Shown in pieces: positions 5,358 to 63,527 of a stretch of DNA of 63,714 bases. The DNA lies in assembly GCF_001194135.2 (NCBI RefSeq), contig NC_068988.1, positions 41,729,418 to 41,793,131 of the forward strand, written 5' to 3'. Position 1 is the first letter of the stretch, and each line of letters begins with the position of its first letter. The stretch is from Octopus bimaculoides. Taxonomy: Eukaryota. A program made the translations under genes and the position numbers. The notes under the pieces are model-generated. The model did not search any database, was not told the origin of the DNA, and saw only the letters and a list, made by a program, of their open reading frames with translations.

Positions 5358-5779
5358 CATATATATATATATATATATTCAAGGACACAGTGTATCATAC
5401 TTTATGGAAAAAACTAGCATGGAAAATAAAATATTTTCGAACAGAGACACAAGGTCAGGAATGGTAGAGTGAGGGGAACAGTCGATTATATTGACCCTCA
5501 TCGCCACCCTATCCAGAATTTGACAGGTACTTTATTTTATTGATCTCGGAATGATTAAAGTGAGAAATGTTGACCTTGGTAGAATCTGAACTTCAAATAG
5601 CAAACAAAAGCATACTCTATAACAAAGCTAAACTAACAATTCTATGCTCCAAAAGATAATGCCGCATACAGCTGAAGCAAAACGGAAGTATACCTAGTGG
5701 TGCAGTAGAAACTCGTATGCAGCTGCTGCAAAAAGAAAATAATAATAACGGTTTAATATTTTTGCACACGGCCAGCACT

Positions 5780-5962
5780 TTTTGAGGGCCAGTGGAAGTC
5801 AATTACATCGACGCCAGTACTTAACTGGTACTTATTTTATCGACCCCGAAAGGATGAAAGGCAAAGTCCACCTCGGCGGAATTTGAACTCAGAACGTAAA
5901 GACAGACGAAATACCGCTAAGCATATTGCCCAGCGTACTAACGATTCTGACAGCTCGCCGTC
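5780..5962 (-). mobile_element. tRNA-derived SINE, family A
   Basis: Reverse complement GACGGCGAGCTGTCAGAATCGTTAGTACGCTGGGC...GAGTTCAAATTCCGCCGAGGTGGACTTTGCCTTTCATCCTTTCGGGGTCGATAAAATAAGTACCAG; its 5' end abuts an (AAT)n run at 5963-6003. Confidence 0.9.
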
Positions 5963-6005
<43 letters not shown>

Positions 6006-9568: not shown

Positions 9569-9624
9569 TGATGGTTTTGATCGATCGCAGATGCTTTAGC
9601 ATCTGCGGTCGATCAAAACCATCA
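9569..9624. repeat. 26-bp near-perfect hairpin with 4-nt loop
   Basis: TGATGGTTTTGATCGATCGCAGATGC-TTTA-GCATCTGCGGTCGATCAAAACCATCA; one T/G position, a wobble pair in + strand RNA. Confidence 0.9.
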
Positions 9625-10569
9625 AGGTCACAAGCCTTGACAATGCTCCTTCTCAAATAATGAACTCCGGCGGTCTGAAAACAGTGGTATGAGGAAAGAG
9701 CTAAAGTTTCGCTTAGATAGAAGACTAGTTATCTTCAATAAGAAATCCAGACCATTTCATGGATATTCCATAAAGGTAAATGGTGTGGACTGTGTAATAA
9801 GCGTGGGAATAAGTGGTGTTCTGTTGTCATAAGTAGAAGACAGAAAAAAGAGAATCAGATAGAGGAATACTAATTATATACAGACCGAAATTGTTTATAA
9901 AATCGGGGGGAAAAAAACACTGAAATATACGAATGAAGCTGAAATGCTAATAAAATGTTTAATATTTTTCTGGCTGTAAAATAAATTACAAGAATATTTG
10001 AAATTAATTGTAAAGGTATTGAAAAATGACTTACACAAATGGGTTGTTATATTAAAGATAGAAATAAATAAGTTGCATGCATAACGAAGATTTTTATTTA
10101 TTTTTATTAATTTCATTTTATTTCATTTCATTTATTTTAATATTTATTTTTTGGTTTGTAAACCTGTTTCTGACAGTCCCATGTTTAAAATATTTTATTG
10201 ACAACAGCACAACAGTAGAAGACAGAAAGAGAGCATTGTAAAGGAGTGACATTGATTGTATACAAACTGATTAAAGTCAAAAAGAAGATCTGGAAAGATA
10301 CGAATGCAGCCAAAGAATTCTCGAATCATTGAAATTAGTTGTAAAAATGATGTTTTAAATCAATTTATAGAAATGAGTTCTTATATTAATCATGAAAGTA
10401 AATTCCGTCCAATGATAAAAACATCACACGTTTAATTTTAAATAACGGAGTGTTAGAAACATGAATTCATATACCCACACAAAAATTGAATATATGCAAT
10501 ATATATTTTAATAGGCTTTGCCAGTTTTTATTTTTAAGAGTCTTTTCACCCCAGTCATCTTTATATTTC

Positions 10570-11455
10570 AATATATTATCAATCCAAGGCGGAGAGGTAA
10601 CAGAAACGTTAGCACGCCGGGCGAAATGCTTAGGTATTTCGTTTGTCTTCAAGCTCTGAGTTCAAATTCCGCCGAGGTCGACTTTACCGTTCATCCTTTC
10701 GGGGTCGATAAATTAAGTACCAGTTGCGTACTGGAGTCAATGTAATCGACTTAGTCCCTTTGTCTGTCTTTGTTTGTCCGCTTATGTTTAGCCCCTTTTG
10801 GGCAGTAAAGAATTAAATATATTATCAATCCAAGGCAGAGAGCTGGGCGAACTGCTTGGCGGTATTTCGTTTGTCTTTAGGTCGATAAATTAAGTACCAG
10901 TTGCGTACTGGGGTCGATCTAATCGACTGGTCTCCCTTCCCTAAAATTCGAGCCTTGTACCTAGAGTAGAAAAGAATATATTATCAATCTGATTAAGATG
11001 GCGAGCTGCTAGAATAGTTAGCACGCCACGCAAAATGTTTAGCAGCATTTAGTCCGCCTTCAAGTTTTGAGCCCAAATTCCACCGAAGTCGACATAACCT
11101 TCCATCCTTTGGAGGTTGATAAAATAAGTGCTATATGAACACTGGGACCGATGTACTCGACTTACACCGTTCCTTAAAGTTACTGGCCTTGTGCCAAAAT
11201 TTGAAATTAATATAACAATCCATTGTAAGGCGGCGAGTTGGTAAAATCGCTAGCACGCCGATCAAAATACTATGCGCCATTTCGGCCATTTTCACGTTCA
11301 GCATTCAACTTCCACCAAGGTCAACTTTGCCTTTCATCATTTTGGGGTCGATAAACAAAGTATCAGTTGGGCACCGAAGCCGATGTGATCCACTTAACCC
11401 CTCTTCCGAAATTGCTGGGCTTTTGCCAAATTTGAAACCAATATATAATCAATCC
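10570..11455 (+). mobile_element. Head-to-tail array of four family-A SINEs separated by five copies of a ~16-bp spacer
   Basis: SINEs at ~10586-10815, 10832-10974, 10995-11208, 11227-11439. Spacer AATATATTATCAATCC at 10570 and 10816; variants at 10975, 11209, 11440. Confidence 0.9.
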
Positions 11456-11825
11456 GATTTGGAATTTCCTTCTTCATTTTTTGATTAGAAAATATGGCAG
11501 TATATTCTTCTAAATAGCATTTAAACGCAAGAAATATCGTTATTCTATCGGAATATTTCTGTTGTTAATATAACAGTCCATTGTAAGATCTTTTCTAATG
11601 CTATTTAGATTTACCAACAAAAGTTGTCTGCATTCATTCTTTTCCCATTTTATTTATACCATTCTACACATAAAGCGTATACCTCTCTTAGAATTTTTCA
11701 AAGTTTGTCGTCCGTTAATATCAACACCTTACATTTTATTTTAAATGTACGAGGTAAATTTGTGATCGGTGATAAATATATATGTGTTTGTGTGTACGTG
11801 TTTCTATGTCCGTGTGTGTGTGTGT

Positions 11826-11871
<46 letters not shown>

Positions 11872-49350: not shown

Positions 49351-49914
49351 TATGAAATAATAGGTTATGTATGAATATATGTATATGTATGTATGTGTAT
49401 AAATCAGTATTATGTTTAAATATATGTATGTATGTATGTATGTATGTGCGAAAATGTATGCGTATGCATATGTACAAATATAAGTTTATATATGTATGTG
49501 CGTGTATCTGTGTGTGCGTGCATGTGTGTATATTTGTGAGTGTGTGCATGTTTGTATGCATGCAAGTAGGCAGGCGGGTACGTCGATGCATGAATGGCTG
49601 AAAGGTTAAGAAGTTCTGTTTGCATCTAGAAGGTCAGTAGTTCGAATTTACGCCGCTTCATCTTAGGTAAATGCCTTTACGATATCCTACCGTCAACCCA
49701 AAGCGTGTAAATACATTTTGGAAAGCAGAAACGCTATAGAAGCCCTCTAGATTCCAATAATTGAAAGGTCCGATCAAGGAACACTTAAGTCACGCCGATT
49801 TTACGTGAAAATTATGTTAATTGCGTTCGTGTCTGTGGAATACTCAACTACTTTGCCCACTGTTTGAATGATAGCTTGTTATTAGTTATATTTATTCTTA
49901 AGATGGTGAACAAA

Positions 49915-50577
49915 GGTGGTGAGTTGGTAGAACCATTACGGTGCTGAACAAGATACTCAGCGGTATTTCATCCATCTTTGCATTCCGACTTTAAATTCCA
50001 TCGATGTCGACTTCATCTCTCTTCCTTTCAGTGTAACTAAGATAAATACCAGCTGAGAACTGGATTCCATGTAATCGAGTATCCACCGCCTCCACTAACC
50101 AAAATGTCGGCCCTTGTGTATATAGAAAGAATTATTACAGAGGCGAATTGACAAAATCGTTACCACGTCGGACAAAATGTTCAGCGTCATTTCTTCCGGC
50201 TTTACGGTCTGAATTCAAATTCCGCTGAGGTCGATTTTGCCTTTTATTGTTTTAAGGTCGATAAAATAACTACCAGTTGAATACTGGGTTTGATGTAATC
50301 GACTTACTCTCTTCCGCATAAATTCCTGGTCATGTGCCTACAGTAGACAGGATTATTAAGGCTGCAAACTGGCAGAATCGTTACCAGCATCTCTTCCGGC
50401 TTTACATTCTGAGTTCAAATACCACCTGGGTTGACTTCGCCTTTCAGTCTTTTGAAGGCGACTTTGCCGTTCATGTTTTCGAGCTCGATAATATAAGTAC
50501 TGGGGTGAATGTAATCCATTGTCTGCTTCTCTCCTCAAACTCGCTGGCCTCGTCCCAAAATTAGACAGGATTATTTA
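49915..50577 (+). mobile_element. Three head-to-tail diverged family-A SINEs
   Basis: Copies start at ~49915, 50140, 50358 and each ends TAGA(A/C)AG(A/G)ATTATT. Confidence 0.8.
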
Positions 50578-61455: not shown

Positions 61456-62677
61456 TATATATACATATATAGCAACAACCAGAATGCTTCAGCATACAAG
61501 AATATATTGATCAGTCTTCGCACAGCTCACAGCTGAACAAGAAATGTAAAATTTGACAATGTTCCAGTTCTGTTATTGATTTTGTAAACGTCCAAAGCAT
61601 TTACGTTAATTTGAAGAACATCCTCAATATAAAAGAGCAGAAATCTCTGTGGATTAGAAACAACAGGAAAGACTGTAACTATCCCAAATAATCTACGGCT
61701 TCATCATCTTTCAATGATATCATGATTATTAGTTATTTATTTTATTCAATATATATTGATTATTCAAGAATATAATTATGATTATTTCTGTGTCATGGTT
61801 ATTATATATATATATANNNNNNNNNNNNNNNNNNNNNNNNNNNNNNNNNNNNNNNNNNNNNNNNNNNNNNNNNNNNNNNNNNNNNNNNNNNNNNNNNNNN
61901 NNNNNNNNNNNNNNNNNNNNNNNNNNNNNNNNNNNNNNNNNNNNNNNNNNNNNNNNNNNNNNNNNNNNNNNNNNNNNNNNNNNNNNNNNNNNNNNNNNNN
62001 NNNNNNNNNNNNNNNNNNNNNNNNNNNNNNNNNNNNNNNNNNNNNNNNNNNNNNNNNNNNNNNNNNNNNNNNNNNNNNNNNNNNNNNNNNNNNNNNNNNN
62101 NNNNNNNNNNNNNNNNNNNNNNNNNNNNNNNNNNNNNNNNNNNNNNNNNNNNNNNNNNNNNNNNNNNNNNNNNNNNNNNNNNNNNNNNNNNNNNNNNNNN
62201 NNNNNNNNNNNNNNNNNNNNNNNNNNNNNNNNNNNNNNNNNNNNNNNNNNNNNNNNNNNNNNNNNNNNNNNNNNNNNNNNNNNNNNNNNNNNNNNNNNNN
62301 NNNNNNNNNNNNNNNNNNNNNNNNNNNNNNNNNNNNNNNNNNNNNNNNNNNNNNNNNNNNNNNNNNNNNNNNNNNNNNNNNNNNNNNNNNNNNNNNNNNN
62401 NNNNNNNNNNNNNNNNNNNNNNNNNNNNNNNNNNNNNNNNNNNNNNNNNNNNNNNNNNNNNNNNNNNNNNNNNNNNNNNNNNNNNNNNNNNNNNNNNNNN
62501 NNNNNNNNNNNNNNNNNNNNNNNNNNNNNNNNNNNNNNNNNNNNNNNNNNNNNNNNNAATCACTATTCTATTTTATATTCTAGTTTTATCTTCTCCATGT
62601 CATCTATTTTGCTCATTATTATTCAGCTTAATTGAACCATCTTCGATATTCGTTCAATGCAGCAGTATTTCGTGAAT

Positions 62678-63274
62678 AAAGGCGGCGAGCTGGCAGAAAC
62701 GTTAGCACGTCGGGCGAATTGCCTAGCGGTATTTCGTCTGCCACTGCGTTCTGAGTTCAAATACCGCCGAGGTCGACTTTGCCTTTCATCCTTTCGGGGT
62801 CGATAGATTAAGTACCAGTTACGCACTGGGGTCGATATAATTGATTTAATCCGTTTGTCTGTCCTTGTTTGTCCCAGTCTGTGTGTAGCCCCTTGTGGGC
62901 AGTAAAGAAATAGGTATTTCATTTGCCGTTACGTTCTGAGTTCAAATTCCGCCGAGGTCGACTTTGCCTTTCATCTTTTCAGGGTCGATAAATTAAGTAC
63001 CAGTTACGTACTGGGATCGATGTAATCAACTTAATCAATTTGTCTGTCCTTGTTCGTCCTCTCTATGTTTAGCCCCTTGTGAGCAATAAAGAAATACGAA
63101 ACATTAGCACGCTGAGCGAAATGCTTAGCGGTATTTCGTTTGTCTTTACGTTCTGAGTTCAAATTCTGCCGAGGTTGACTTTGCTTTTTATCCTTTCGGG
63201 ATCGATAAATTAAGTACCAGTTGCGTGGCCTCCTCCCACAAAATTTCAAGCCTTGTGCCTAGAATAGAAAAGAA
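62678..63274 (+). mobile_element. Trimeric family-A SINE flanked by a single 12-bp TSD
   Basis: TATTTCGTGAAT at 62666-62677 and 63275-63286; units start at ~62678, 62913, 63097. Confidence 0.88.
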
Positions 63275-63527
63275 TATTTCGTGAATCAACATTCTTGGAA
63301 CAAGCGAAGGTCGGCAGTATTTAAAAAAAATTATCGAAAATTCGGGTAATGCAAAAACAAGTACTGCTGTTACATGTGTTTGTGTGTGTGTGTGTGTGCG
63401 TGCGCGCGCGTGCATGAAATGTATATATTTATATATAAATTCATGCAGGTATATGTATATACATTCATACACACATATAAATACATATATATATATATAT
63501 ATATATGCACACACACACACATATAAG

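What the first reader, a model, noticed from the sequence alone, without database searches (positions are those of the whole stretch)
10570..11455. Polarised SINE array: four insertions at one target, five copies of the target site
Seen: AATATATTATCAATCC (or a close variant) at 10570, 10816, 10975, 11209 and 11440, alternating with four same-orientation family-A SINEs. The copies have three different 3' end types (GCAGTAAAGAA; CCTAGAGTAGAAAAGAA; GCCAAA(A)TTTGAAA), which argues against simple tandem duplication. Divergence rises from left to right: the B-box region GAGTTCAAATTCCGCCGAGGTCGAC is intact in copy 1, GAGCCCAAATTCCACCGAAGTCGAC in copy 3, GCATTCAACTTCCACCAAGGTCAAC in copy 4. Inference: repeated target-primed insertion at the upstream copy of the same TSD, giving a repeat-spacer array that records insertion order, architecturally like a CRISPR array. 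Caveat: copies 1 and 2 share a head variant (GAGAG for GCGAG), so that pair may involve a longer duplication.
Basis: partly seen in the sequence, partly recalled or inferred. Interest (0 to 1): 0.75.

Follow-up and report, generated by a model that had tools for sequence, protein, structure and literature searches.

The report
Four SINEs stacked at one site
Four unrelated copies of a short retroposon (SINE) landed one after another at the same nick site in an animal genome, each time duplicating the small target sequence. This is a tidy example of a known "repeat insertion at a hotspot" process, not a new kind of system.

Summary
Four same-strand SINE units lie at 10586-11439, and the 16-mer AATATATTATCAATCC occurs four times with at most one mismatch (0 expected by chance).

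The units are not copies of each other:
- They are 65-86% identical.
- They carry three tail types that recur elsewhere in the window.
- Each is as close to, or closer to, copies up to about 52 kb away.

Serial independent insertion at one nick site is therefore the best explanation, and it is a known mechanism (McGurk & Barbash 2018; R1 arrays).

1. "Spacer 3" (11207-11229) is not a copy of the target. It matches 22/23 a native motif 128 bp downstream of the array (11565-11587). This implies a 148-nt target duplication for unit 4 plus loss of about 125 nt, or another rearrangement.
2. Divergence falls into two classes, not a four-step gradient: 8.4% and 12.5% versus 22.6% and 21.4%. The target copies are much less diverged than units 3 and 4, so divergence is a poor clock here.
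3. Unit 1 is probably 5'-truncated, with a 27-nt target duplication that includes unit 2's head. That would explain the shared GAGAG and date unit 1 after unit 2.

Head-to-tail SINE clustering is general in this window: 8 tight junctions versus 0.1 expected. The CRISPR likeness is only geometric. No comparative data could be reached.

The parts
10559..10569 (+). Native left flank (CTTTATATTTC) ending at the re-used bottom-strand nick position (TTC|AATATA)
   Evidence: Sequence. Left flank + P + right flank align across the junction with a SINE-free paralogous copy at 10015-10090 (3/300 shuffles reach the score).
10570..10596 (+). P0: upstream target copy of unit 1. It comprises the 16-nt P motif plus an 11-nt copy of unit 2's head (AAGGCGGAGAG).
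   Evidence: 26/27 identical to 10816-10842. The 30-nt match scores 52 against a shuffle maximum of 30 (D5, 48).
10586..10815 (+). SINE unit c1, tail type A (…GGGCAGTAAAGAATTA). It is probably 5'-truncated, with true SINE sequence starting near 10601 (CAGAAACG).
   Evidence: nhmmer E=4e-61. Divergence is 8.4%. There are 4 mismatches in the first 15 nt against 10 in the other 151 (P=0.015).
10816..10831 (+). P1: target copy between c1 and c2
   Evidence: Exact 16-mer.
10832..10974 (+). SINE unit c2, tail type B (…CCTAGAGTAGAAAAGAA), with two internal deletions (20 nt in the head; ~51 nt including the B box)
   Evidence: Divergence is 12.5% over 96 aligned nt.
10975..10994 (+). P2: target copy extended by GATT (AATATATTATCAATCTGATT)
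   Evidence: 18/20 identical to 11440-11459.
10995..11206 (+). SINE unit c3, tail type C (…GCCAAAATTTGAAA), with a degraded B box (GAGCCCAAATTCC)
   Evidence: nhmmer E=8e-58. Divergence is 22.6%.
11207..11229 (+). P3: T-type motif TTAATATAACAATCCATTGTAAG. It is a copy of 11565-11587, not of P. Its last 3 nt (AAG) coincide with the first 3 nt of the SINE head consensus.
   Evidence: 22/23 identical to 11565-11587, with 0 matches expected by chance (D7, 53). It needs three indels to align with P.
11227..11439 (+). SINE unit c4, tail type C (…GCCAAATTTGAAACC), with a degraded B box (GCATTCAACTTCC)
   Evidence: nhmmer E=2e-57. Divergence is 21.4%.
11440..11459 (+). P4: native downstream copy of the target (AATATATAATCAATCCGATT)
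11460..11564 (+). X: native non-SINE sequence between P4 and T2, part of the candidate 148-nt target duplication of c4 (11440-11587)
   Evidence: No SINE homology even at E<=100. Its 3' end is contiguous with T2 in the paralogous copy.
11565..11587 (+). T2: native motif TTAATATAACAGTCCATTGTAAG, the source of P3
   Evidence: 11537-11600 aligns without a break at 11564/11565 to the reverse complement of 10018-10088 (score 54; shuffle maximum 39; 0/300).
10018..10088 (-). Paralogous SINE-free copy of the ~70-nt local repeat that also contains the P site and the T2 site. A second, weaker copy lies at 10350-10425.

Best explanation
The locus is a retroposon insertion hotspot. Four SINE copies, from three tail subfamilies and two divergence classes, were inserted separately by target-primed reverse transcription. 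Each time the bottom strand was nicked at the same place, TTC|AATATA, at the 5' edge of a 16-20-nt AT-rich motif (P). Each time the top strand was cut a variable distance downstream.

Gap repair then duplicated the stretch between the two cuts. A copy of P therefore sits on both sides of every new unit, and the new unit lies upstream of the older ones.

Inferred order and duplication lengths:
- c4: 148 nt (P-X-T2, 11440-11587).
- c3: 20 nt. The ~125 nt P-X of the upstream copy was then lost, either by deletion between the two AATATA microhomologies or as a target-site deletion made when c3 inserted.
- c2: 14-16 nt.
- c1: 27 nt, reaching 11 nt into c2's head.

Shown: the units are independent, P is repeated, P3 is a copy of native T2, and c1's upstream flank matches P1 plus c2's head.

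Inferred: the TPRT mechanism, the 148-nt duplication, the deletion, and the order of c2 relative to c3 and c4.
For: - The P motif occurs 4 times at <=1 mismatch, with 0 expected.
- The units are 65-86% identical to each other and no closer to each other than to dispersed copies. Their three tail types are each shared with copies elsewhere.
- c3 and c4 share 7 derived states, 6 of which are also present in other copies.
- The flanks carry no SINE homology.
- The reconstructed empty site (left flank + P + X) aligns across the junction with a SINE-free paralogue.
- P3 matches T2 at 22/23, and T2 is native within a 64-nt homology that is unbroken at 11564/11565. P4 starts exactly at c4's 3' end and P3 ends exactly at c4's 5' end, as the two ends of a long target duplication must.
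- c1's 30-nt match runs into c2's head and carries the private A variant, and c1's first 15 nt hold a mismatch cluster.
- Another array in the window (62679-63282) has a clean 12-nt outer target duplication, which shows this family makes variable-length duplications.
- SINE-next-to-SINE junctions number 8 against 0.1 expected.
- The mechanism has precedent: tandem transposable elements with the target duplication kept in the junction (PMC5932611).
Against: - A 148-nt target duplication is unusually long, and the loss of P-X' is an extra ad hoc event.
- The target-copy pairs attributed to the old units differ at only 3 of 43 nt, against about 12 expected at the c3-c4 rate (P=0.002). Either c3 and c4 were already diverged when they inserted, or their age is overestimated. 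The ordering of c2 relative to c3 and c4 is weakened accordingly.
- c1's truncation rests on one shared variant and a 4-nt mismatch cluster.
- The scaffold is a gapped draft (13 N runs), so a local misassembly cannot be excluded.
- No orthologous or allelic locus could be examined.
Confidence: 0.72

Rival explanations
1. One reading: four insertions, always into the upstream copy of one ~16-22-nt target duplication. Spacer 3 then decayed by mutation, and its likeness to 11565-11587 is secondary.
For: Four of the five spacers fit. P3 still resembles P when gapped.
Against: - P3 would need three indels plus substitutions, while P2 and P4 changed by about 1 nt each.
- The 22/23 match to T2 cannot be chance.
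- T2 cannot be a copy of P3, because T2 sits inside a longer native homology that includes its flanks.
- The interleaved order P,P,P,T,P,T is impossible for nested duplications alone.
Confidence: 0.08
2. Local tandem duplication or unequal crossing-over of a [spacer+SINE] unit, followed by divergence. This is the satellite-like expansion seen for R1 or hobo arrays.
For: The head-to-tail arrangement has a roughly regular period of 159-246 nt. c1 and c2 share a head variant.
Against: - The units are no closer to each other than to dispersed copies.
- They carry three different tails.
- Tandem Repeats Finder reports no array with a period of about 230 nt.
- The spacers are far more alike than the units: 90-100% versus 65-86%.
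Confidence: 0.04
3. One complex retroposition event: a concatemer made by reverse-transcriptase template switching between SINE RNAs.
For: The array at 62679-63282 looks like exactly this: no spacers, 5'-truncated downstream units and one outer target duplication.
Against: - In the array under study every junction carries a target copy.
- Three of its four units reach the 5' end of the SINE.
- c1+c2 differ from c3+c4 in divergence at P=1e-4.
Confidence: 0.04
4. Assembly artefact: a short-read draft scaffold mis-joined repeats around 11200-11590 or collapsed or expanded the array.
For: There are 13 N gaps in the window, one of them 285 nt downstream of the locus. The odd interleaved P3/T2 arrangement is the kind of thing a misjoin could create.
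Against: There are no Ns inside 10500-11870. The units are 14-35% different from each other, so they are not easily confused by an assembler. The junction sequences are each unique.
Confidence: 0.08

Closest known systems
Tandem transposable elements formed by double insertion at one target site (McGurk & Barbash 2018, Genome Res, PMC5932611; Drosophila R1 array with 33-nt rDNA duplications, Roiha et al. 1981 as cited there)
   Same: The units are head-to-tail and the target-site duplication is preserved in every junction and at both outer flanks. The cause is insertion-site preference.
   Different: Here there are four units from different subfamilies and of apparently different ages, not copies of one active element. 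There was no later expansion by unequal exchange. The duplication length varies (14-27 nt, possibly 148 nt). The elements are non-autonomous SINEs in what appears to be a mollusc-like genome; the organism was not identified by any tool.
LINE-mediated target-primed reverse transcription with variable target duplications, 5' truncation, long duplications and target-site deletions (established for L1/Alu; cited from my own knowledge, not read here)
   Same: The nick site is fixed and the second cut is variable. c1 is 5'-truncated. There is 3-nt microhomology (AAG) at c4's 5' junction. A possible target-site deletion occurred at c3.
   Different: The partner LINE and its endonuclease preference are unknown. 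The tails are not poly(A) but short A-rich ends (…AAAGAA, …TTTGAAA).
Chimeric retrocopies made by template switching (L1-type U6/Alu chimeras; my own knowledge)
   Same: This applies to the neighbouring array at 62679-63282, not to the finding itself.
   Different: The finding has target copies between its units.
CRISPR arrays
   Same: Only the geometry is shared: staggered cuts on either side of a short sequence, followed by fill-in, duplicate that sequence on each addition, and additions appear to occur at one end.
   Different: This is a eukaryotic locus with no Cas machinery or leader. The 'repeat' is an arbitrary genomic target and the 'spacers' are selfish elements. Rfam CRISPR hits are only sub-threshold chance matches.

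Membership tests
SINE (short LINE-dependent retroposon) | Short (100-500 nt), dispersed, multi-copy, non-coding | tested here: met
   22 segments of about 100-230 nt on both strands, covering 6% of the window. They contain no meaningful ORFs.
SINE (short LINE-dependent retroposon) | Flanked by target-site duplications of variable sequence and length | tested here: met
   - TATTTCGTGAAT flanks 62679-63282 (1/2000 shuffles).
- The 16-27-nt P copies at the locus under study.
- (ATT)n flanks at 5745-5965.
SINE (short LINE-dependent retroposon) | tRNA-derived head with internal Pol III A and B boxes | tested here: inconclusive
   By eye there is a B-box-like GAGTTCAAATTCC and an A-box-like TTAGCACGCCGG about 50 nt apart. 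ARAGORN finds no tRNA, and Rfam gives no tRNA match even at E<=10.
SINE (short LINE-dependent retroposon) | 3' tail shared with a partner LINE | not testable with these tools
   The window holds no LINE ORF and no host genome is available.
Multiple-insertion tandem (McGurk & Barbash Fig. 1C type) | Target duplication present in each tandem junction and at both outer flanks | tested here: met
   Met for P0, P1, P2 and P4. The c3/c4 junction instead carries the T-type copy, which the long-duplication model accommodates.
Multiple-insertion tandem (McGurk & Barbash Fig. 1C type) | Units are separate transposition products, not copies of one another | tested here: met
   Pairwise identities, tail types and shared-derived-state counts.
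Tandem repeat or satellite formed by unequal exchange | Units more similar to each other than to dispersed family members | tested here: not met
   c3-c4 identity is 66.7%, against c3 or c4 to the 5745 copy at about 74-75%. c1-c2 identity is 86%, against c1-e3 at 89%. Tandem Repeats Finder finds no long-period array.
CRISPR array | Prokaryotic locus with conserved structured repeats, a leader and cas genes | tested here: not met
   This is a eukaryotic-type scaffold with microsatellites, N gaps and SINEs. No Rfam CRISPR repeat reaches gathering score, and there are no coding ORFs.

The most novel reading that the evidence does not exclude
In this genome, resident SINEs or their upstream target copies act as beacons, so that new SINEs of any subfamily are inserted at exactly the same phosphodiester bond. 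Arrays would then grow only at the 5' end and form a readable chronological record of SINE subfamily activity. This would be a genome-wide property, suggested by the 8 tight same-strand SINE junctions against 0.1 expected in this 60-kb window, and not a one-off coincidence of endonuclease preference.
Probability: 0.2. Interest if true: 0.55.

Novelty: new member of a known kind. Interest (0 to 1): 0.3.

Why it matters
The locus shows that one nick site can be re-used at least three or four times by SINEs of different subfamilies. The nesting of target duplications (c1's duplication containing c2's head) gives an insertion order that does not depend on sequence divergence.

That independence matters here. 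The divergence clock and the target-copy clock disagree, which warns against dating these SINEs by distance from a consensus.

If the strong SINE-next-to-SINE tendency seen in this window holds genome-wide, it would say something about the target choice of the partner LINE. It would also bear on how SINE-rich genomes build the tandem substrates from which satellites can later grow.

Tried and rejected
- **Orthologous or allelic loci.** Exact-protein look-ups of two ORFs spanning the junctions found nothing. A search with the open frame of the SINE consensus found no protein. Two metagenome scans with conserved SINE 21- and 25-mers found nothing. A full-text search for SINE sequence strings found nothing. 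As a result the organism and the named SINE family remain unidentified. My impression that it is a cephalopod SINE is from memory only.
- **'[c4-P4-X] inserted as one piece into T2' (3' transduction).** Rejected, because X and T2 are contiguous in a paralogous copy.
- **'T2 is a templated copy of P3'.** Rejected for the same reason.
- **'X is a fifth, degraded SINE'.** No homology even at E<=100.
- **'Pre-existing minisatellite of P'.** Rejected. With four inserts each making its own duplication, five motif copies leave room for only one original.
- **Extended homology between the P context and the T2 context.** Not significant directly. Both are linked only through the 10018-10088 paralogue.
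- **Same 'duplication includes the neighbour's head' pattern in the 49914-50573 array.** Only suggestive (172/2000 shuffles).
- **Self-comparison by BLAST of the whole region.** It failed for technical reasons and was redone with tiles.

Full report
**Context.** The window is a gapped eukaryotic scaffold with 13 N runs, abundant (TG)n and (TA)n microsatellites and about 35% GC. It has no tRNA genes, no Rfam family at gathering score, and no credible protein-coding ORF. A profile built from nine copies finds 22 segments of one SINE-like family, covering 6% of the non-gap sequence. The family is about 215-230 nt long. It has A- and B-box-like motifs, a conserved core (GGTCGATAAATTAAGTACCAGTTG…) and three alternative 3' ends. 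Neither ARAGORN nor Rfam recognises a tRNA in it, so 'tRNA-derived' remains an inference from the box motifs. No tool identified the organism.

**Check of the observation.** The 16-mer AATATATTATCAATCC is present exactly at 10570 and 10816, and with one mismatch at 10975 and 11440. No dinucleotide shuffle gave a single match at that stringency. Between these copies lie four same-strand units:
- c1, 10586-10815
- c2, 10832-10974
- c3, 10995-11206
- c4, 11227-11439

- Type A: c1, with 62679-62912 and 62913-63096.
- Type B: c2, with 63097-63282 and 50136-50355.
- Type C: c3 and c4, with 5745-5965 on the minus strand.

c2 has two internal deletions, one of which removes the B box. The fifth 'copy' at 11209 is different, as described below.

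**Independent insertions or local duplication?** Over a 168-nt shared core the identities are as follows:

| Pair | Identity |
|---|---|
| c3 vs c4 | 66.7% |
| c3 vs copy at 5745 | 74.9% |
| c4 vs copy at 5745 | 73.7% |
| c1 vs c2 | 86% |
| c1 vs copies ~52 kb away | 87.5-89% |

Six of the seven derived states shared by c3 and c4 also occur in other copies, five of them in the older copies of the window, so they mark an older subfamily and not a local duplication. Tandem Repeats Finder reports no long-period array. The spacer motif is absent from the flanks of every other copy, so it is not part of the element.

**Ages.** Divergence from the window consensus is 8.4% (c1), 12.5% (c2), 22.6% (c3) and 21.4% (c4). 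c1 vs c2 and c3 vs c4 are statistically indistinguishable. The two pairs differ at P=1e-4. This is a two-class pattern, not a four-step gradient.

The target copies attributed to the old units are also too alike. P2/P4 match at 18/20 and P3/T2 at 22/23. That is 3 differences in 43 nt, where the composition-matched c3-c4 rate predicts about 12 (P=0.002). The discrepancy disappears only if half of the c3-c4 difference predates insertion. Either c3 and c4 came from already diverged sources, or divergence overstates their age. A recent Octopus vulgaris annotation lists about 900 SINE families with recent insertions (PMC13282606), but that is relevant only if this is a related genome. The degraded B boxes of c3 and c4 argue for some decay in place.

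**The fifth spacer.** The sequence 11207-11229 (TTAATATAACAATCCATTGTAAG) needs three indels to align with P. It matches 11565-11587, 128 bp beyond the array, at 22/23. That downstream copy (T2) is native. The stretch 11537-11600 aligns to the reverse complement of 10018-10088, without a break at 11564/11565 and including the trailing TGTAAG (score 54; shuffle maximum 39). Three consequences follow:
- P3 is the copy and T2 the original.
- An insertion junction at 11564/11565 is excluded. This rejects a 3' transduction of c4-P4-X.
- The order of motif types along the locus (P,P,P,T,P,T) cannot be produced by nested target duplications alone.

The simplest account is that c4 was inserted with the usual nick at the left edge of P, but with the second cut 148 nt downstream. 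That duplicated P-X-T2(AAG). P4 begins exactly at c4's 3' end and P3 ends exactly at c4's 5' end, as this model requires. The P-X part of the upstream copy was later lost. It could have gone by deletion between the AATATA microhomologies of P and T, or as a target-site deletion when c3 inserted. A 5'-junction filler copied from T2 is an alternative I cannot exclude. Misassembly is also possible.

**Unit 1.** The match between the left flank of c1 and the c1/c2 junction runs 30 nt, at 10567-10596 against 10813-10842 (28/30; score 52 against a shuffle maximum of 30). It extends 11 nt into the SINE head and includes the A variant (GAGAG) that only c1 and c2 carry. Directly after it, c1 has GTAA where the family has CTGG. 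That makes 4 mismatches in its first 15 nt, against 10 in the other 151 (P=0.015). The likely reading is that c1 is 5'-truncated and its target duplication is 27 nt, made of P plus c2's first 11 nt.

**Empty site.** The left flank, P and X joined together align across the junction with the SINE-free paralogue at 10015-10090 (3/300 shuffles).

**Wider pattern.** Same-strand SINE neighbours separated by 25 nt or less number 8 in the window, against 0.1 expected and a maximum of 2 in 5000 placements. The other two tight arrays are built differently:
- 62679-63282 has no internal spacers, 5'-truncated second and third units, and a single outer duplication TATTTCGTGAAT. This is best read as one event with template switching.
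- 49914-50573 has TTATT(A) at every junction, which could be either a tail or a short duplication. Evidence that its first unit's flank copies the next unit's head is only suggestive.

**Comparison with what is known.** Tandem elements that keep the target duplication in the junction, formed by repeated insertion at a preferred site, are described for Drosophila P, hobo and R1 elements and for bacterial insertion sequences (PMC5932611). This locus is another instance. It is unusual mainly in stacking four non-identical SINEs and in the long-duplication complication. The CRISPR comparison is valid only as geometry.

**Verdict.**
- It is a new member of a known kind.
- Interest is modest.
- Comparative data, which I could not reach, would settle the order of events and the 148-nt duplication model.

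Noticed in passing
62679-63282 (outer duplications 62668-62679 and 63283-63294): Three same-strand SINE units are joined without spacers. The second and third are 5'-truncated (starting near model positions 50 and 17), the tails are types A, A and B, and there is a single outer target duplication TATTTCGTGAAT. It looks like one retroposition with template switching between SINE RNAs.
   Followed up: partly
49914-50573: An array of three to four older SINE units is separated by TTATT(A), which also occurs at both outer flanks. It is unclear whether this is a short re-used target duplication or part of an (ATT)n-like tail. The last unit has an internal duplication or deletion.
   Followed up: partly
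whole window: SINE segments are strongly clustered head-to-tail: 8 same-strand junctions with gaps of 25 nt or less against 0.1 expected, and 11 with gaps of 200 nt or less against 0.8 expected.
   Followed up: yes
10018-10088, 10350-10425, and inverted at 10540-10569+11440-11480 and 11537-11600: A ~70-nt AT-rich local repeat is present in two direct copies upstream and two inverted copies downstream. The SINE target P and the T2 motif both lie inside copies of it. It may be the ends of an old foldback or MITE-like element.
   Followed up: partly
9569-9624: A 56-nt near-perfect palindrome (GATGGTTTTGATCGATCGCAGATGCTTTAGCATCTGCGGTCGATCAAAACCATC), 93% self-complementary.
   Followed up: no
10832-10974: Unit c2 carries two internal deletions, 20 nt in the head and about 51 nt including the B box, so it could not be a Pol III source copy.
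   Followed up: yes
5432-5592 and 5745-5965 (minus strand): Two same-strand SINE copies lie 156 nt apart. The better-preserved one sits inside an (ATT)n microsatellite, with (ATT)n on both sides, which hints at a preference for AT-rich, ATT-like targets.
   Followed up: no
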